Assembly (NCBI RefSeq): GCF_002571385.2
Contig: NW_019217922.1
Location: forward strand, 363,096-427,095
DNA length: 64,000 nucleotides
From: Stylophora pistillata
Taxonomy: Eukaryota
Direction of reading: 5' to 3'
Both the position numbers and the translations under genes were made by a program. The notes below the pieces were generated by a model that saw only the letters and a program-made list of their open reading frames with translations, did no database searches and was not told the DNA's origin. Shown one piece after another: positions 4,701 through 56,400 of this stretch (positions are counted from its first letter, which is position 1; the number at the start of each line of letters is the position of its first letter).

Positions 4701-7700
4701 AATTTTTTGAGTTTTGCAAATGAAGATCAGTATTTCTCCATTCGTCCCTTTTTAATCGCCAATAAAAACATTTTCAAGTGGAAATCAATTGAAACAAGAC
4801 AAGGATATCGGTCTTCGTGTACAAATCTCTTTTTCCCCCTTCACCTTCCATTAGTCAGCCATCTTCGATTAGCCATGGAAGCAAAGATTGCGTTACAAGA
4901 CGGGGGAGGAGCTATCCCTTTTATAGTCAGGGTCCTTGTTTAAAGAAATTGCAGAAGAAGCCTGAAAAAGTTGAGGCTTTGTCTTATGGTGATTTGAACT
5001 CCATGCCTTTTAGATACCAGAAGGCACCACTACCAACTGAGCTATACAGCCACATTTTTGGAGGAATATAAATTTCAGCAGGTTCTTTGTTCTCATGAAG
5101 GAGTCTGATTACAAACATATGACCCTGCAATTTCTGAAATTTCCCTAATTGCTACTCAACTGCAAGTATTATTTCTTCACTTGCAAAGTGAATCCTCTTA
5201 TCATCATAATAACCTCAAAAGGAAATTTAAGTTGAATTTCTTAAATGCAATAGGCCTTTGAGAAATGTTTGAAGGACATATGCAATAATGCATTCATCAA
5301 TCAGGATGAACAAGTTACTGTCTTAAAGAGATTACATGGAAAGCTAGATTGTTTCATATTCTATTCAAAGCTTGAATACTGATCTCTCAGTTGAACTCTA
5401 CTGAACCAAAGCTATTAACCAAATAAGCAGTACTCCCCTCTTGTCACATTGTCTCAAAACCCTTTACACCTTAACACCAGTATCCATATTTCCCATGCTC
5501 TTCTCTATACATTTCTGTTGGTACTGACAAGGGGAATTTGTTTAACAATCAAAGTTTTTAGGTTGAATGGTGATCATTTTCTTTACTCTCACCATTTTAA
5601 TGAATGATTCAGCAATATTACTGTATGGAGAAATTACACACTAGTCACTCCGAATTACAGTCAAGTCGCCGACGGTTCAACTCGCCAACGCCAACTCACT
5701 GACGTCTAAACTTAAGTAGAAATGTCGGCAAGTTGGTCTTCAACCCAGTATAACATATCAGAAGTCAAACATTTAGAAAAGTAAACGATCTTTAGTAAAA
5801 AAGCAATTTTTTTTCTTCCAACAAAGTTTATAAGGATCTCATGGCGAACAAGGAAAGGTCAACATCAGCAATTACTAGAACAGCTCCAGACGCAAATGAG
5901 TTATCATGTGACAACAGCACCGTAAAGACTCATCAGGTCGATTGGTCAACTTGGCTTTCTAGTCAAGATCTTTATTAAAAACAATTCTTTTTAATTTCAA
6001 CAAAGTTTATAAGGATCTCAAGGCGAATAAAACAAGATAAAGATCGGCAATAACTATAAAAGCTTCAGACGCGAATGAGTTATTGCGTGACAACACCATA
6101 AAGACCCATCATGTCAATCGGTCAGATTTTTCAAAGAACACTTGGCTTTTTAGACAAGATCTTTAATAAAAAGCAACTATTTTTATTTCCAACAAAGTTT
6201 ATAAGGATCTCAAGGCAATAAAAGTAAGACAAACATCTCCAATTAGTCTAACAGCTTCAGATGCAAACGAGTTGTTGTGTGACAACGACACTGTAGCGAC
6301 TCATCATGTCAATTGGTCAGACTTTCTAAACAAGATCTTTGTTAAAAAGCAATTCTTTTTATTCGCAACAGAGTTCATATGGATCTCAAGGCGAATAAAG
6401 CAAGGCGAACATCGCCAATGAACAAAAAAGCTTTAGACACAAACGAGTTAGTGTGTGACAATAACACGTACTGTAAAGGCTCATCATGTTAATAGGTCAG
6501 GTTTTTTTAAAAAAAACTTGACTTTCTAGGCAAGATCCTTAGTATACAACAATTATTTTTATTTGCAACGAACAAGTTATTGTGTGACAACAACACTGTA
6601 AAGACTCACTCGCCTCTACAGCTTTTTTGTTCATTGGCGATGTTCACTTTGCTTTATTCACCTTGAGATCCTTATAAATTTTGTTGGTAATAAAAATAAT
6701 TGTTTTTTTACTAAAGATCTTGTCTAGAAAGCCAAGTTTTCTTAGAAAATCTAACCAATTGACATGATAAGTCTTAATGGTGTTGTTGTCACACAACAAC
6801 TCGTTCACGTCTGAAGCTGTTTTATAACATAACCAAAGTAAAGCGCGCGCTCTGATTGGTCAATTTAGCGTCCCCCATTTGTCCATGGGTGTACGCTGCT
6901 GACATGAGCAAATGCAAAGACTATTTTTCCGCGCGCGCTTGTTTTTTCTGGTCGCGTAAGATTTGATAAATAAAAGGGAACTCTTTAGCTACAATGTATC
7001 AATGTTATGTGATAAAACAAATGGCAAACACCACAGGGTACACTATTGAGTTATGGATGCACTTGGGAGGTTTGCTAAGCACTCAAGAAGCTAGAGTCGC
7101 TCTCGGCTATCGCCTCGAGTGACTCTCTAGCTTCTTGAGTGCTTAGCAACCTCCCACGTGCATCCATAACTCAATAGTGTACGCTGTGATGTTTACCATT
7201 TGTTAAATAGCAATTGGTGATGTTTATCTTGCTTTATTTGCCTTGAGATCCTTAAAAACTTTATTGGAAATAAAAATAATTGCCTACTACTTAAGATCTT
7301 GTCTAGAAAGCCAAGTTTTCAAAAAAAATCTGACTGATTGACATGATGAGTCTTTACAGTGTTGTTGTCACAATAACTCGTTCGCATCTGAAGCTGTTAT
7401 AGTCATTGGTGATGTTTATCTTGTTTTATTCACCTTGAGATCCTTAAAAACTTTGTTGTAAATAAAAATAATTGTTTTTTACATAAGATCTTGTCTAGAA
7501 AGCCAAGTTTTCTTAAAAAATCTGACCAATTACATACACTTTATTGATGCTCCCTAAGTCAACTTTTCAGCCCAATTGACATGATGAGTCTTTAAAGTGT
7601 TGTTGTCACACAATAACTCGTTTGCATCTGAAGCTGTTAGTCATTGGCGAGGCTTATCTTGCTTTATTTGCCTTGAGATCCTTATAAACTTTGTTGGAAG

Positions 7701-37387: not shown

Positions 37388-49287
<11,900 letters not shown>

Positions 49288-50668
49288 TACTTGGGTTTTA
49301 AATATAATTATTCAGGAGAAGTTTGTCTTGTTTGAAAATATCCATTCCAGAAGATATCTCTTGGCCCATGACCATTGCTAAGAGGATTTTGTCTGCTATA
49401 GAAGCTGACAATGAACTGGTACTTGATTGTGAAAAATAAAAGATCAACAACTCCTGGGTGTTCAAACAGCAAAGGCAAAACATGAATCTAACATTGCAAG
49501 TACAAATAGTCAATTTCCTCCTAACAGCTTTGGCTTATGAAATCCTGTGATATGTTAACCGGAGAACCTTCCTTTGGCTAGGTATGAATATTTTTTTCAA
49601 CCACAAAGGCACATTTTTGGCCTTTTGTTGGTTTGAGAACAATCTGTCAAAGGAAATTTGAAAGCAATAACAAACAGTTCCCAAGGGGAAATAATGACAG
49701 GAAATAAATCTCTTTATTTTTGTTCATGATCAACAGCTGCAATTATAGTCTTCCACATCTTAAGCTAATGTTATAGTATCTCATCTTTTTCCACTGTTCA
49801 TTTATAATGAGAAACTTTCCCATGAGAGGAGTAATTAGATAATGCAGTCTAATGATGTATAGAAGCCAAATGGGCCCATGTTAAGACGATGTCAAAAAAA
49901 GAGGTTAACGTCAACATAGAAAAGTACCTTTGAGCCAGCATCCATGATATTGATATTTATTGTAAAACAAACATTTCAAAGAGTTACTTTTATTGTATCT
50001 CAATTCATATACCAAAGTAATGTTTTATGCCTCCTTACAGTGAGCCACAAGAAAGAGTTACTAAAAATATTGAGGGAAATTATTTTCAATTTGTAATTAC
50101 ATTGTATACAACACGAATTTATCATTCAACTATAAAGTTATGAAATGAATTTAAATAAAGTACATTTAGCCTATAAAAGATAGAAATTATTAAATATACC
50201 TTGCCACAATTTCTCAGACTGTTTTCAAATTAAGGTTACTTCAAATGGATATTGTCTTCAGTGGTAAAAATACATGTATGAACAAGGTAACATCAGAAAT
50301 TACCTTAAATTTGCAACTGGAGTTAAATTTCCTTGTACAATAAAGATTATTTTGCATTACATATGACAGTCTTATTTTTGATTTGTTTATAACTTTAATT
50401 TAATAATACTTGAGTTATTTTAAAATCTGTGTTTTACAAGTATTCTTTTACGAAGTACAAGATCATATTTCACCTTGCATTTTCATTGTAATGATTTTCC
50501 CTAAAAAATAATGCAAAATTGACTGGTAAATTGTCAGTAATGATAAGTTCTCTACTAGCTTTGAAGCCAACATGAGATACTTAGAGAATTTAATCATTAA
50601 GAGTTTGTTCAATTATTCTTCAAGGTAATTTTTAAAATGGTCATCTTCCATCCTTTCTGTACATCAGA

Positions 50669-53008
50669 TTACTCTATAAGTCCAAGATCTTTAAGAATCT
50701 GGGAAACTGTACTTGTCTTCAGCGCATACATGGCAGATGCAACACTGAATTTGCCTGTGGCTATTAGCACAGCCACTGGTACCACCTGATCCATAACAGT
50801 TCCTCTGGCTACATGCTCAGAAATGTGTAGACTGAAAACATCATTGATGGAATCCCTTCTGTATATTGCCTTGAGAACAGCATGCAAAGCACATTCCTGG
50901 TCAGTTCTAGCAAAAGTAGAAACAATAGATTTTGCTCGATGGAATAACTTGCTGTTACTAACTTTTACATCAATCATGAGACCTCTTAGGACCTTTCCTT
51001 TCAACACATGGGCTCCTGTTGAAATTGCATTGAGAATCCATTTAATAGAAATCTCTTGGAGACACTGGTTCAAAAATTCACTGAGTAATACTGTATTTGA
51101 TGAACTCTTTTCATTGAGGCATCCTGTTGGATGATTTAGCTCCACATGGATGACATGCTTGAAAAGATTCCACAATTCACTTTTTTTCTTATGCATGATG
51201 CCAATTAATTGTGTGCCTTTCCCTTTAATCAGATGAATCAATTGAGTAACTTGCCGAAAGGCCTTGTTATCAGAAGAAATTAATACTACTGTGTCATTTA
51301 TGGTCAGTTCAGGTAAAAAAATGCTTTGAAAATCCTCCAGGGAGATGCAAAGCTTTTTGGAACCATTAAGCATTAGCTCTCCTTCTCTGTTGTTCAGAGC
51401 ATTGTACCCTTCTGCTATGAAGCCTCTCACATCATCAAAGTTAGCACTAAATGTAGGGACACACTCAGAGGCATCCAAAAGACCCATAAATCCTTCTGAT
51501 CCCCATCCAATATAGAAAACATGGCCATTAGACTTGAGGCTCTCTGCAGCTAGCTCAAGAGCACGTGCAATACTAGAACAATTTAAGTAAGTTCTTCTGT
51601 ACATGTTCTCATACATCAGAAGAATTTCAGGCAGTGTGTTGAGCATTGATCTTGGCTGGGAGACTGAGGCGTGTGCTTTAACTAAAATCGACTCCAAAAG
51701 TATCTTAGTGGCCCTTCCTCCTTTCATACGCGATGACCCTGTAATGGCTTCTGGGCCAACAACTGGATTAACAATGATCCCTTTGTCATTGGCTGTGAAC
51801 ATAATTAACCAAATTTGATCAATACTGACAACACAACATATAACTGGTTATGCAAAGCAGTTGCTGAGATAATGTTTTGTCTAGATGTGTTTAAGCAAGC
51901 CACGTTCATTATTGGAAAAGTATGCCATGCCTTACATTAGTATTAAATTTTAGTTTCACCCTTTAACTCTTAAGAGCAACTGGCTTTTCTTTTCTACCAA
52001 CAATATCACCCCTTGATCAAACATGAAGGTCGCAAGAATGAAGTTAAAAAAAATGATGACTACCAACTAAAGCAGCTCTTGATTGTTAAACAAGTTCTCA
52101 GTACCTTCCAAAATGTATAGAGAACAGTATGGAGAATATGCATATTGATGTTAGGGTGTAGAGGGTAAAGCCTTAAGCCTAAAACTCCACAACACCTTAA
52201 CAATGCTTAGGCAGTGCAATACTACATTGTGTGAGGCTGAAAATTGACAGGGTACAGGCACTGCTTTAGTTCATAAGGTAACCGTAATTCTCCAACTATT
52301 AAATGTGCAGAAGGGGAGCTGGAGGAGAAGAATCGAAGAATCGTCGGGAATCTCCTCACCTTCTAATGCATTGGCAACATCGAAAAACGACTTATCCCAT
52401 TGTTCTATTGGGTTTTTCCTTGCCTGGTGTACAGGATTGAATCCCAAAAGAACGGGAATAAAGATATCACTGTGTCTCATGCAGCACTCTAACTGTCCAG
52501 CTACATAAGGCGCAGAAAGACCACATGTTATACCGATAAACAATACTCGTTTCTTATGACGAGACAACTGTATCAAATCTTCTTCGCCTTTTTTCCAGTC
52601 ATCTTCTGGCGCTTCTTGTGATGTAAACAGGGAAATGTCGCCACCTGCAATAAGATAATCGTAACACGCTGAGATCTGCTGGGCTTTGGCGAGCTGGGAA
52701 AATTTGTGAGCCAGAAAATAGGCTAGCCTTCCAGATGTACCACAACCGCTAAGAACTATGGCTTTGTCGCCACTGCTGTCTTGTATAATCTCTTTCGCTT
52801 TCTCCGCAACTTTATCCATCGCATATATAGTATTCTCGTCAAAGACACTTGGAAAGTCTTTCCAGCCGGAAAATATCTGAGCGTCGCATTGACGAAGAGT
52901 TCTTGCAATGTCACTTGCAGTGCCAACATCGATGTCAATTGCAAGCTCATTTCGGAGTTCAGTGATTGGTATTATACCCTCTTTAGAATATTCCTTTCTT
53001 ACACTCAT
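50669..53008 (-). CDS. GCKR: Glucokinase regulatory protein-like (tandem SIS domains, MurQ-related), 2 exons (53008-52360, 51792-50669), 590 aa
   Basis: Motifs PITE..N, LRQCDAQIF, VLSGCGTSGRLA, LIAGGD, EAPEDD, IGITCGLSAPYVAGQL, PVLLGFNP, VGPEAITGSSRMKGG, KWILNAISTGAHVLKGKV and MIDVKVSNSKLFHRA. A phase-1 GT-AG intron joins the two long ORFs. Confidence 0.9.
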
Positions 53009-53499
53009 CTTTACTTGCTAAAGGAGTTTATTCAAGATCTCCCACAAAAAAAAATTTAGAATGATTAAAAAGGAGATCAGCTGACTTTTTCGCGGATTTC
53101 GAAAGCTATCGGTAAGAAGTGTTACGCTCTACAAGAACCAAATCAGTCAAGCATTGTCAGCAGCCTTGGGTCTTTACCCAGGGAGGAGTGGTAGAATCAG
53201 TGGTTTAAAATGCAAGTTGTAGAGAAAGGTGAAATTTGAACAAGGATTTTCATTACTCTTTTCCGTGCCTTCACATCAATTTTCAAAATTTTAAAAAAAA
53301 AACTACTTTAAAGGAAGGAAAAAAGTCAACCTATAAAAGTCATCTTCTGCCAGCAAGAAGTACTACCCCTCCTACCCCTCGAGCCCTGGAGGTTTTGGAC
53401 CGCGACTTCTATCCCAGACAGCATTTCAAGCACACATTGTACAGCGGCCATCTTGGATCGTCGTCTACCCGGTTCGTCAGTCTGAAGTTTTATCGCGAA
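53009..53499. promoter_or_regulatory. Bidirectional promoter region GCKR/ATP5PD
   Basis: Divergent start codons about 490 bp apart. GCGGCCATCTTG (YY1-like) at about 53444-53455. Confidence 0.55.
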
Positions 53500-56400
53500 A
53501 TGGCAGCAAGAAGGATTGGGAAGTATGTTCCAGACTGGATTAAACTGGCGACAAAATGCCCCGAGGAAGGGAAACCTGTTTTCAATAGAATGAGAACCAA
53601 ATATGAGAATTTAAAAACACGGTGAGTTGTTACAACCAATACAATATGTCTTGCCTAACTTTTGCAGTATGAGGTACATTGAACAAGCTTTGAAGAGTAA
53701 AGTTGACATCGACGTTAATTGGTATTAGAAGAGTCAGGAAGACCTAAAAAGTTTGACTGTTGTGTTAAATTTTATTTAAAACACAACGTACCCTTGCAAA
53801 TAGGCCATAATGCCATTTTCACATACATGTCATGGCTTGAATAATATTGTTAGACTGAGCCTTGGCAAACGGTACTTGATATTGCCTCGAGATCACAATT
53901 AAAAGACATTTTAGGAAGAAATTTCCAAAAATTGCAAAAAACAAAAACAAAAACAAAGCAAAATACAGAATGCAAAATACAGAAAGCAAAATACAGAATG
54001 CAAAATACAGAACGTATTTAATTAGTATCTATTGGAGTTCTCTCTCTCTCTCTTGGCCCCCACAGAATTGATACAGTTGCACCTAAACCAGAGCCAATTC
54101 ACTGGGACTGGTATGCCAAGAATATAACTAAACCAGGAATGGTTGAAGCCTTCAGGAAAGCTGTAAGTAACATTAAAATCAATATAAGGGTTAAGAGAGG
54201 CTGACAAGGATATAATTTGTTATAATTCATCCACATTTCCAAGCCCTGGTCATCATCTGCCATCTTCAGAAATACTTTCATTGAACTGAATATTTAGGAA
54301 AGCTATGAATGTTGAAGAACAGTTTGTGTTGAAAGGATAAAGTAAAGTGTGTGGATTTACAAATTTGTACATTTTTTATACTGGTGGTATCTGTTTGATA
54401 TATATATATATATACATTAGTTGAAGAATCAAAGAGGTCACATTGATTCTCTGTTACTCTGAGTTTCGCGCCGAAGCACTTGTCAGACAGAATTTTATTC
54501 AATAAAGAACATACCTCCTTATATATAGTAGTTAATTAATTCGCTGGTGCAATGAAATAAATGAATGAATAACTATTCTCTGGGGCTATTGTTGGCGGCT
54601 TGTGAAATTTGATAAGTAAAATTTATTCTCATGTCGGCATTTAGAAATAAGTTCTGTTCTTTTGTTTAATAAAGACAGCTTCTTAGCTCTAATTAGATAA
54701 AGTTCCTCTGTGAGGCACAAGTGGCACCACTTGCTTTTGTTGTTGTAGGCCGGGGCGGTTGCTAAAATACTCCAGTTAATTGTGAAGTTGGTGTTGCTGT
54801 CTTTGAGTGTCCAGATATACTTTCATAACTCCGTGCTGCTTGATTATTTTCTGTTTCGAAAAGAAAGCTTGTGCTGCGTGTAGCGTTGTTTAAAGGTTCC
54901 TTCTGTTGGTCCAATGTAATTCTTTCCGGTTGTCATTTTCAGTTGATACGTTGACGTTGTAGATGACACTTGAAGTGAGGCAGTTGTTTTTCAGAGGGCA
55001 GTCGTTTTTTTTCCTGCAGTTACAGTTGTTTTCTGTAGGGGGTGTCTTGCTTGTCTCAAGGATTTTCCTGTTGTGTTTCTTAATTATGGTTTGTAGGTTG
55101 TCAGTGCAGTTATAGCTAACTTTTATGCTGTTTTTGTTGAAGATACATACATACATACATACATACATACATACGTACATACATACATACTTGATTGTAA
55201 CTCCCTAAAAAGGGTTTTTCAGTCACGAGGCTAGAAAATCTTGTTGTACCGGTGATTTTTTGGAAAATGCTTGCTGATGAGGTTCAGAAATTCTCTGCCG
55301 ATGTTTGTTTGCACTTCATGCTGTAGGGCAGATTAAACCAAATTATGTTTCTTTGTCTGCTTTTGTGGTTGCAAGTTTTAGGTTTCTTGTGTTGGTGTAG
55401 GTTAGTTTTTAGCCATGTCTGCTTTGTTTGAGTGCACTTTCATAGTGTGGCTTGGTTTTATTGAAGAGTTCTTTACTTGAGGAGATGTCGGAGATGCATC
55501 GGCCGATTGCTGCAGGTATGTGTTTTATTATTGTTGGCGGGTGGTTTGAATTGGTGTTGATGTTAAGGGTTTCGTTATTGGGCTTTTTGTATGGATAGTG
55601 GCTTCTGTCCACGAGGTTTAGGGTGACATCAAGGAAGTTGCAGATTTTGAGGTTTGTGCTTATGTTGATGTTCAGGCCTAGTTTCTGGAATTCACGTGTG
55701 ATGTCCTTTCTGGTCCTTTCAGATTGTGGTCCACTTGTGTTTCTTAGAAGCACCAGCCCATCATCTCTGTTGAGTCCTACGTTGTTCTTGCTGTATTTTT
55801 CGCCAGGGTTGTTCAGGAGGAAAAGTTCGATAAGCTCGCAAATTTCAGCTCCGTCAAAGCTGCCCATGGTGACGTCGAACATGCTGCTATGGTTTTTTTT
55901 GGTCCAGGTGGTCTTGTTGTCAAATAAAAGCGATTTTCAGCAGTGCATGATTATTTCAATGTCTTTGTCGCTAATTGTGGTGTAATTCTTGGCAAAAGAA
56001 ATTGCGCTAGAGAGAAGAGATTCTGTGATGGATGGGTAGAAGCTGTCGATGTCGAATGAGGTGAACGAATGCTTTTGCTTGCTGGGTATGCCTGTGAACC
56101 AATTAATTACATCTGATGTGTTTTTTTACTGGTTGAGCTTCATTGTTTTTCTGATTTTTGAGTTGATGTTGGGGAGAGTTTGTTTGCTGACTTTTCCCAG
56201 TTCACTTTTTGCGGGGTTTATGAGGCTGCATGTAGGGTGGCTGGCGAAGTTGTCTTTCTGATCTTTTAGGGTGATAAAAGCTTGTAGTTTTGCGATCTGT
56301 TCTGCGCAGTTATTGATTTTGAGCTCTTGGGCGATGGATTTTGCTTGTGAGTCAGTGACGTTAGCGGTGTCGGTGCTGGCTTTCTTGTAGGTGGTTGTGA

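What the first reader, a model, noticed from the sequence alone, without database searches (positions are those of the whole stretch)
50669..53008. Cnidarian GCKR-like protein keeps a MurQ-type composite active site: regulator or still an enzyme?
Seen: SIS domain 1 has the phosphate loop GCGTSGR and EAPED. SIS domain 2 reads GLLDASECVPTF, and SNSKL follows later. Known: GKRP derives from a duplicated MurQ (MurNAc-6-phosphate etherase). As I recall them, E. coli MurQ reads GILDASECPPTY and EGAED at its two catalytic glutamates, while mammalian GKRP has diverged to DGVECIHTF. Inference: one cross-domain site here looks more MurQ-like than in mammals. The protein could be an ancestral sugar-phosphate enzyme or sensor, acting for example on bacterial cell-wall sugars or on symbiont-derived hexoses, in an animal with no liver-type glucokinase system described.
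Basis: partly seen in the sequence, partly recalled or inferred. Interest (0 to 1): 0.75.

Follow-up and report, generated by a model that had tools for sequence, protein, structure and literature searches.

The report
Coral GKRP-family protein, probable MurNAc-6-phosphate etherase
This is an expressed, two-exon coral gene for a glucokinase-regulatory-protein relative that keeps the full bacterial MurQ-type active site, so it is most likely a peptidoglycan-sugar enzyme, a conclusion already published for other non-mammalian animals.

Summary
A minus-strand gene with two coding exons (53008-52360 and 51792-50669) encodes about 590 aa with GKRP_SIS_N, GKRP_SIS_2 and GKRP lid domains. All four quoted motifs are present.

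Against E. coli K-12 MurQ, the DASEC Glu aligns with Glu83. The second Glu of EAPED aligns with Glu114, and SNSKL aligns with TNEKL. Human GKRP does read DGVECIHTF.

The feature is not special to cnidarians. DASEC occurs in 107 of the 120 best homologues, including sharks, teleosts, molluscs, hemichordates and a sponge. At 25 tabulated site positions the window protein matches a Branchiostoma GKRP-like protein at 24.

A 2026 preprint reports MurNAc-6-P etherase activity for lancelet GKRP and resurrected ancestors, and cites Naegleria and weak frog activity. Glucokinase inhibition arose only in jawed vertebrates.

The window protein lacks the gnathostome N-terminal extension and a vertebrate-only insert. 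PolyA RNA contigs confirm expression and the intron. The gene is single-copy.

Verdict: a new member of a known kind, probably an active etherase. Interest is low to moderate.

The parts
52360..53008 (-). Coding exon 1: 216 full codons plus the first base of a split Ala codon. It encodes the N-terminus and most of SIS domain 1.
   Evidence: Pfam GKRP_SIS_N scores 1.2e-44. Xenopus GKRP 3w0l_B scores 1.1e-53. RNA contig X10 record 8 covers 52360-53123.
51793..52359 (-). Intron of 567 nt, GT..AG on the minus strand. It holds a dispersed short repeat at about 52045-52166.
   Evidence: One polyA-RNA contig in X10 joins 51792 to 52360, skipping 567 bases with ends CT..AC on the + strand. In X8 and X9, low-depth contigs run through the intron, which fits pre-mRNA or DNA carry-over. 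Repeat copies were found.
50669..51792 (-). Coding exon 2: the last two bases of the split codon, 373 codons and the stop. It encodes the end of SIS-1 (TGSSRMKGG), SIS domain 2 and the C-terminal lid.
   Evidence: Pfam GKRP_SIS_2 scores 3.2e-34 and GKRP-like_C scores 7.2e-24. Xenopus GKRP scores 1e-69 and MurQ 4s12 scores 8.4e-24. RNA contigs cover 50400-51794.
52727..52747 (-). GCGTSGR, the phosphate-binding loop of SIS-1. It corresponds to human G106-R112 and to MurQ GAGTSGR.
   Evidence: Thr109 and Ser110 are listed as F1P/F6P contacts in the PMC4109836 figure legend.
52601..52615 (-). EAPED. Its second Glu (exon-1 aa 135) aligns with E. coli MurQ Glu114 and human GKRP Glu153.
   Evidence: BLASTP, HMMER alignment, contact list.
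51449..51484 (-). GLLDASECVPTF in SIS-2. Its Glu aligns with MurQ Glu83 and human Glu348. Its Pro sits where human has His351, as in MurQ.
50945..50959 (-). SNSKL in the lid. Asn, Lys and Leu correspond to human N512, K514 and L515, and to MurQ TNEKL.
53009..53123 (-). 5' UTR, minimum extent.
   Evidence: X10 contig record 8 reaches 53123. X8 and X9 contigs cover 53026-53161.
50400..50668 (-). 3' UTR. It extends beyond the stretch that was laid.
   Evidence: X8 and X9 contigs run continuously over 50400-51222 and continue past 50400. In X23 the first mates lie on + only.

Best explanation
The locus is the single-copy coral orthologue of the metazoan GKRP gene. It encodes a cytosolic pseudo-dimeric MurQ-type enzyme.

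SIS-1 supplies the phosphate loop (GCGTSGR, TGSSR) and one acid/base Glu (EAPED). SIS-2 supplies the second Glu (DASEC). The lid supplies Asn, Lys and Arg (SNSKLFHR). Together these form one active site.

The protein most likely cleaves the D-lactyl ether of MurNAc-6-phosphate, giving GlcNAc-6-phosphate and D-lactate. This would let the animal use muramic acid from digested or resident bacteria. It is unlikely to inhibit a hexokinase.

Shown here: gene structure, expression, splicing, domain content, residue conservation, orthology within Hexacorallia, and absence of two vertebrate-only segments.

Inferred: catalysis, by analogy with assayed orthologues. Also inferred: the source of the substrate. 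An animal GlcNAc kinase is the likely source, because mammalian NagK phosphorylates free MurNAc.
For: Family and site:
- All three GKRP domains pass the Pfam cut-offs.
- MurQ Glu83, Glu114 and the lid Lys align with conserved residues.
- Of the 19 human F1P/F6P contact residues listed in the PMC4109836 legend, 15 are the same by my hand count. Three of the four differences (G107C, V180C, H351P) are the common non-mammalian state, also seen in Xenopus; S179T is seen in most invertebrates, lamprey and lancelet.
- 24 of 25 tabulated site positions equal a Branchiostoma belcheri GKRP-like protein.

Published assays:
- Lancelet GKRP has etherase kcat/Km of 1493 M-1 s-1, against 3140 for E. coli MurQ.
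- Chordate, vertebrate and gnathostome ancestors are active, and rat is not (preprint 10.64898/2026.05.08.723886, Results read).
- Tunicate and cephalochordate GKRP do not inhibit their glucokinases (passages of 10.64898/2026.05.05.723016).

This locus:
- The window protein lacks the roughly 18-aa gnathostome N-terminal extension and the 4-6 aa vertebrate insert.
- DASEC and the lid SN.KL motif are kept in relatives from 98% down to about 45% identity. Two caecilian GKRPs have lost the Glu, so retention is not automatic.
- The gene is expressed and spliced in polyA RNA.
- It has one copy in the 397.6-Mb assembly.
- It nests with Nematostella and Actinia in a 22-row clade with SH-aLRT 99 (quick tree).
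Against: - No cnidarian GKRP has been assayed in anything I read.
- The catalytic roles of MurQ Glu83 and Glu114 are recalled (Hadi et al. 2008), not confirmed by any search. One search found nothing useful.
- The substrate supply is not shown. No AnmK match was found in the genome, nor a BcrAD_BadFG/NAGK-type match. Six-frame profile searches on an intron-rich genome are weak, so these blanks prove little.
- The only Amidase_2 (PGRP-type) match lies on a 1582-bp contig and has stops inside it.
- I could not model the joined protein, so site geometry rests on homology to 4BB9 and to MurQ structures.
- The assayed lancelet species may not be the one I aligned.
Confidence: 0.7

Rival explanations
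1. The protein is an enzyme or binding protein for a different phosphosugar. Candidates are another 3-O-substituted or N-modified hexosamine-6-phosphate, or fructose or sorbitol phosphates. In this reading MurNAc-6-P is not the physiological ligand in corals.
For: [quoted passage not shown] No MurNAc-6-P-producing kinase was found in this genome. The surface loop before the lid is specific to this lineage.
Against: Every tabulated site residue equals the consensus of invertebrate GKRPs, and 24 of 25 equal the lancelet genus, whose protein turns over MurNAc-6-P. No residue change suggests a new specificity.
Confidence: 0.18
2. The protein is a non-catalytic, sugar-phosphate-sensing regulator of a coral hexokinase, a vertebrate-type GKRP function.
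For: It belongs to the GKRP family, with best PDB hits to Xenopus and human GKRP. A GCKR transcript changed with immune challenge and heat history in Exaiptasia (one passage of 10.1101/2025.04.21.649845), so it is regulated.
Against: The inhibitory interaction is reported to have arisen in jawed vertebrates by a loop insertion, and it is absent in tunicate and lancelet pairs. The window protein lacks the gnathostome N-terminal extension and the vertebrate insert. It does not carry the ILFLEY-type stretch that Xenopus shows before the lid. That this stretch contacts glucokinase is my recollection only.
Confidence: 0.07
3. The locus is a decaying or contaminant sequence with no function in the coral.
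For: Low-depth RNA contigs run through the intron in X8 and X9.
Against: Both exons are open, the splice is confirmed, and the strand-specific signal is on the correct strand. The gene sits on a 64-kb eukaryotic window with retroelement debris and a spliced neighbour. It clusters with anthozoans.
Confidence: 0.02

Closest known systems
Invertebrate and early-chordate GKRP orthologues with etherase activity (lancelet GKRP; Naegleria gruberi GKRP-like protein)
   Same: The architecture is the same: two SIS domains plus a lid. There is one intact MurQ-type site and one degenerate site. 24 of 25 tabulated site residues match a Branchiostoma protein. There is no gnathostome N-terminal extension or vertebrate insert.
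   Different: It is a cnidarian lineage with only two coding exons. Exon 2 is one 1.1-kb exon, and relatives down to about 45% identity appear as the same stand-alone ORF. The loop before the lid is lineage-specific. It has not been assayed.
Bacterial MurQ (MurNAc-6-phosphate etherase), E. coli b2428; PDB 4lzj, 1nri, 4s12
   Same: The SIS fold, the GxGTSGR phosphate loop, Glu83 and Glu114 equivalents, TGSSRMK and the lid N-x-K-L motif are all present.
   Different: MurQ is a 298-aa homodimer with two sites. Here two diverged repeats are fused in one chain, only one site is kept, and the first repeat's lid is lost. Identity is only 27-32% over the local alignments. NCBIfam MurQ models score below their cut-offs: 130 bits against a cut-off of 168, and 124 against 302.
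Vertebrate glucokinase regulatory protein (human 4BB9/4LC9, Xenopus 3W0L)
   Same: It is the same Pfam family and the best PDB match (1e-69 and 1e-53). 15 of 19 ligand-contact residues are shared with human.
   Different: Human reads DGVEC-IH-TF where the window reads DASEC-VP-TF. The window lacks the roughly 18-aa N-terminal extension that the preprint links to control of the glucokinase interface. It also lacks the vertebrate insert after CDAEIF.

Membership tests
GKRP family (Pfam GKRP_SIS_N + GKRP_SIS_2 + GKRP-like_C) | All three domains are present, in order, above the gathering score. | tested here: met
   One search gives 151.1, 118.8 and 84.7 bits against cut-offs of 27, 27 and 27.7. 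The domains are spread over the two exons in the expected order.
GKRP family (metazoan orthologue) | A single locus placed with other animals of the same phylum. | tested here: met
   There is one match in the 397.6-Mb assembly. The quick ML tree places it in a 22-row clade with Nematostella and Actinia at SH-aLRT 99. The careful tree search did not finish.
MurQ-type MurNAc-6-P etherase (functional class) | A phosphate-binding loop GxGTSGR and the SSR segment. | tested here: met
   GCGTSGR and TGSSRMK align to MurQ GAGTSGR and TGSSRMK.
MurQ-type MurNAc-6-P etherase (functional class) | Two acid/base glutamates, E. coli Glu83 and Glu114. Their catalytic role is recalled, not confirmed here. | tested here: met
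   Glu83 aligns with the Glu of DASEC in exon 2. Glu114 aligns with the second Glu of EAPED in exon 1.
MurQ-type MurNAc-6-P etherase (functional class) | Full-length match to curated MurQ models. | tested here: not met
   NCBIfam NF003915 scores 130.2 bits against a cut-off of 168. TIGR00274 scores 124.2 against 302. This is expected for a fused, diverged eukaryotic form searched exon by exon. It is not a bacterial-type MurQ.
MurQ-type MurNAc-6-P etherase (functional class) | Conversion of MurNAc-6-P to GlcNAc-6-P and D-lactate. | not testable with these tools
   The activity is known for lancelet GKRP, ancestral GKRPs and Naegleria. It has not been tested for any cnidarian.
Glucokinase-inhibiting GKRP (gnathostome type) | An N-terminal extension (human residues 1-30) that modulates the glucokinase interface. 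| tested here: not met
   The roughly 18 extra N-terminal residues seen in 6 of 6 gnathostomes are absent from the window protein, lamprey, lancelet and 10 of the other 11 invertebrates aligned; the starfish row has residues of its own there.
Glucokinase-inhibiting GKRP (gnathostome type) | The six-residue loop insertion that created the glucokinase interaction. | tested here: inconclusive
   The position of the loop is given only in a supplementary figure that I could not open. Apart from the N-terminal extension (row above), the only vertebrate-rich, invertebrate-poor insert I found within the window's exons is 4-6 aa after CDAEIF. The window protein lacks it.

The most novel reading that the evidence does not exclude
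In corals the GKRP-type etherase is more than a nutritional salvage enzyme. It may be part of how the host handles peptidoglycan signals. Animal GlcNAc kinase makes 6-phospho-muramyl compounds, which in mammals are the active NOD2 ligands (title and abstract listing of PMC9477735). An etherase acting downstream would remove the muramyl-6-phosphate pool. That would couple bacterial load, immunity and amino-sugar metabolism in a holobiont. The divergent response of a GCKR transcript to immune challenge after heat stress in Exaiptasia hints at such a link.
Probability: 0.1. Interest if true: 0.6.

Novelty: new member of a known kind. Interest (0 to 1): 0.25.

Why it matters
The locus shows that the GKRP gene in a reef-building coral keeps the full ancestral etherase site and is transcribed. 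This extends to Cnidaria the published picture that animal GKRPs were peptidoglycan-sugar enzymes long before they became glucokinase regulators.

For coral biology it marks a host gene that may process bacterial cell-wall sugar, which bears on heterotrophic feeding on bacteria and on host-microbiome interaction. It also warns annotators that the label 'glucokinase regulatory protein' on invertebrate genes is probably a misnomer. The concept itself is not new.

Tried and rejected
- **Upstream pathway.** I searched the window's own genome in six frames. AnmK (PF03702) gave no match. BcrAD_BadFG/NAGK (PF01869) gave no match. Amidase_2 (PF01510) gave one match with internal stops on a 1582-bp contig. 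These blanks are weak for an intron-rich genome, so I do not read them as absence.
- **Catalytic glutamates in print.** I looked for an open paper stating the catalytic role of MurQ Glu83 and Glu114 (searches; find in PMC13041923) and found none. That role stays recalled.
- **Veiga-da-Cunha 2009.** I tried it by a recalled DOI. It is not held, so I know its content only as cited.
- **Cnidarian reports.** One search (the phrase 'glucokinase regulatory protein' with 'coral' and 'symbio', at least 2 of 3 terms) listed only one paper among the 15 shown that holds the GKRP phrase, an Exaiptasia preprint with a single mention. I found no cnidarian assay. That is a statement about these searches only.
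- **Neighbouring genes.** ORFs from 36 to 64 kb show retroelement debris and an apparent ATP synthase subunit d first exon. Nothing is pathway-related.
- **Structure prediction.** I did not run it. Geometry therefore rests on homology to 4BB9 and its published contact list.
- **HGT or contamination.** Rejected on intron, polyA RNA, tree position and eukaryotic context.
- **Supplements closed.** The closed files may hold the loop position (Fig. [quoted passage not shown] S5 of 10.64898/2026.05.08.723886), and which lancelet species was assayed.
Full report
**What is there.** The finding's coordinates hold a minus-strand gene with two coding exons.
- Exon 1 starts at the ATG at 53008. It runs for 216 full codons to 52361, plus one more base at 52360, before a GTGAGG donor.
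- Exon 2 starts at 51792, after a ...ttcacAG acceptor. Its first two bases complete a GCC (Ala) codon. 373 codons then follow to a stop at 50671-50669.
- The predicted product is therefore 216 + 1 + 373 = 590 residues.

**Expression and splicing.**
- Seven runs on record as polyA RNA-seq, labelled coral metagenome or 'organism A', hold about 0.63-0.68 of the sampled words of window 50400-53300. That is roughly what the exons and UTRs make up.
- One X10 contig joins 51792 to 52360, skipping 567 bases with CT..AC ends on the + strand, which is GT..AG on the minus strand. This is exactly the predicted intron.
- X8 and X9 also hold low-depth contigs running through the intron. These fit pre-mRNA or DNA carry-over.
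- In the raw-read run X23, first mates lie on the + strand over the exons. That fits a minus-strand transcript in a usual stranded library.
- The 5' UTR reaches at least 53123, and the 3' UTR extends beyond 50400.

**Family.**
- Pfam finds GKRP_SIS_N (1.2e-44) in exon 1, and GKRP_SIS_2 (3.2e-34) and the GKRP lid (7.2e-24) in exon 2.
- The best solved relatives are Xenopus GKRP 3w0l_B (1e-69 and 1.1e-53) and human GKRP 4bb9. MurQ structures 4s12, 4lzj and 1nri follow more weakly.
- Curated bacterial MurQ models hit both exons but stay under their cut-offs.
- The assembly (397.6 Mb, 5513 contigs) has one copy.
- In a quick maximum-likelihood tree of 46 rows, the window protein sits inside a 22-row clade (SH-aLRT 99) with Nematostella, Actinia and unnamed relatives. 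Its closest relatives are at 98%, 84% and 74% identity. The careful search did not finish.
- Together with the run labels, this supports a hexacorallian (coral) host gene inherited vertically.

**The active site.** I fetched E. coli K-12 murQ (b2428) from an annotated record.
- BLASTP aligns MurQ GILDASECPPTY with the window's GLLDASECVPTF, so Glu83 pairs with the DASEC Glu.
- VEGAED aligns with QEAPED, so Glu114 pairs with the second Glu of EAPED.
- TGSSRMK aligns with TGSSRMK, and TNEKL with SNSKL.
- Human GKRP reads MDGVECIHTF at the same place.

A figure legend in PMC4109836 (passage seen) lists 19 residues of human GKRP that contact F1P/F6P in 4BB9. They come from SIS-1 (including Thr109, Ser110 and Glu153), SIS-2 (Glu348 and His351) and the lid (Asn512, Lys514, Leu515 and Arg518).
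- The two Glu and the Lys therefore do converge on one pocket in a solved relative.
- By hand count on the alignments, the window protein has the same residue at 15 of the 19 positions. At position 178 the 4bb9 chain has Ile where the paper writes Leu, and the window also has Ile.
- The four differences are G107C, S179T, V180C and H351P.
- The mirror-image site is degenerate. It has GWGSEGF for the phosphate loop, Lys for Glu83 in SIS-1, and a gap at the SIS-2 counterpart of Glu114. 'One cross-domain site' is the right description.

**Is it special?** It is not.
- Among the 120 best homologues of exon 2, 107 read DASEC, 5 DAAEC, 2 DAVEC (frogs), 1 DATEC and 1 DACEC. Four gave no match.
- Two of those four are C-terminal fragments. 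The other two are caecilians that read MEAVGC, so they have lost the Glu.
- Over all 182 proteins fetched, 159 carry DASEC within the stricter pattern.
- DASEC carriers include sharks, sturgeon, teleosts, lamprey, lancelet, hemichordates, molluscs, a brachiopod, echinoderms, an octocoral relative (DAAEC) and a sponge.
- In a table of 25 site positions, the window protein equals a Branchiostoma belcheri GKRP-like protein at 24 (Ser versus Thr at human 258). It equals the invertebrate consensus throughout. The Cys, Cys and Pro at human 107, 180 and 351 are also found in Xenopus.
- The derived state is the mammalian one.

**What is known.** A 2026 preprint (10.64898/2026.05.08.723886) is directly relevant. 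I read its introduction, results, conclusions, methods and reference list. It reports the following:
- GKRP is a single locus in Metazoa.
- Lancelet GKRP is an active MurNAc-6-P etherase, with kcat/Km of 1493 M-1 s-1 against 3140 for E. coli MurQ.
- Resurrected chordate, vertebrate and gnathostome ancestors are active, and rat GKRP is not.
- Enzymatic activity and glucokinase binding are not mutually exclusive.

The preprint cites Veiga-da-Cunha et al. 2009 for etherase activity of the Naegleria protein and weak activity of frog GKRP. I could not open that paper. A companion preprint (10.64898/2026.05.05.723016, passages only) reports that tunicate and cephalochordate GKRPs do not inhibit their glucokinases. 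It also reports that inhibition arose in the jawed-vertebrate ancestor through a six-residue loop insertion. The position of that loop is in a supplement I could not see.

**Vertebrate-only features.** I scanned alignments of each exon with 6 gnathostome, 1 lamprey and 12 invertebrate proteins for vertebrate-rich, invertebrate-poor columns. Two runs appeared, both in the part covered by exon 1.
- One is an N-terminal extension of about 18 residues, seen in gnathostomes only.
- The other is a 4-6 residue insert after the CDAEIF helix, seen in all vertebrates including lamprey.
- The window protein lacks both.
- The preprint links the N-terminus (human residues 1-30) to control of the glucokinase interface.
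- The loop before the lid, where Xenopus reads TWPILFLEYEG, is highly variable among invertebrates. It reads NHPTGCLNEKSSSNTVLLSE in the window. That this loop touches glucokinase is my recollection only.

**Mechanism proposed.** The protein is most likely an active, single-site, pseudo-dimeric MurNAc-6-P etherase feeding GlcNAc-6-P into amino-sugar metabolism (confidence about 0.7).
- The substrate would come from bacterial peptidoglycan. The phosphorylating step is not identified here.
- Mammalian NagK phosphorylates free MurNAc with kcat/Km of 1.9e3 M-1 s-1 (PMC11716661, passages), and muramyl peptides as well (PMC9477735, listing only). An animal GlcNAc kinase is therefore a plausible source.
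- My six-frame profile searches of the coral genome found no AnmK and no BcrAD_BadFG-type kinase. That is weak negative evidence in an intron-rich genome.

Rivals, with rough confidence:
- A different phosphosugar ligand (0.18).
- A hexokinase regulator (0.07).
- A non-functional locus (0.02).

**Verdict.** The enzyme reading is the best one, but it is the expected, already published state of non-mammalian GKRPs, not a cnidarian peculiarity, and nothing points to symbiont hexoses. This is a new member of a known kind, with interest of 0.25.

The boldest reading not excluded is that the enzyme helps set the level of phosphorylated muramyl signals in the coral holobiont. A GCKR transcript did respond divergently to immune challenge after heat stress in Exaiptasia (one passage). 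I give that reading about 0.1.

Noticed in passing
window 52045-52166 (inside the intron); also 5459-5585 and 38814-38885: A short dispersed repeat. RNA-seq contig depth over 52049-52242 is about 3e4, against 4-80 on the exons, and many loose ends and 'goes back' joints occur there. The reads therefore come from many copies elsewhere. Copies within the window are 77-86% alike.
   Followed up: partly
proteins P0085 and P0092 (caecilian GKRPs): They read MEAVGC where other GKRPs read (I/L/M)DASEC, so Gly replaces the MurQ Glu83 equivalent. Their phosphate loops read GCGSSGR and GCGNSGR. This looks like an independent loss of the etherase site in a tetrapod lineage.
   Followed up: partly
protein P0114 (625 aa, named as a Candidatus Sumerlaeia MAG protein): A bacterial record carries a fused two-SIS GKRP-type protein with GAGTSGR and DASECPPTF. 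It groups with a sponge GKRP in the quick tree (SH-aLRT 91). Its letter make-up is flagged as unlike the rest. This could be transfer or contamination.
   Followed up: no
window 53490-53625 (+), head-to-head with the GKRP-like gene: A first exon begins MAARRIGKYVPDWIKLATKC and ends at a GTGAG donor. It looks like mitochondrial ATP synthase subunit d, which is a recalled resemblance and was not tested. Its start codon lies about 480 bp from that of the GKRP-like gene, so the two may share a bidirectional promoter.
   Followed up: no
window 47024-48625 (-) and 55409-55882 (-): ORFs here have reverse-transcriptase-like sequence. This is retroelement debris flanking the gene. It was not searched against families.
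   Followed up: no
hits P0001-P0035: Dozens of unnamed 350-400 aa ORF calls start just upstream of the NPVVGPEAITGSS segment. Exon 2 therefore seems to be a single large exon, with the same intron position, across relatives down to about 45% identity. [quoted passage not shown]
   Followed up: partly
G000:C3754:741-1089 (L003): This is the only Amidase_2 (PGRP-type amidase) match in the assembly. It lies on a 1582-bp contig and has two TAA stops inside the match. It may be a fragment, a pseudogene or a contaminant.
   Followed up: no
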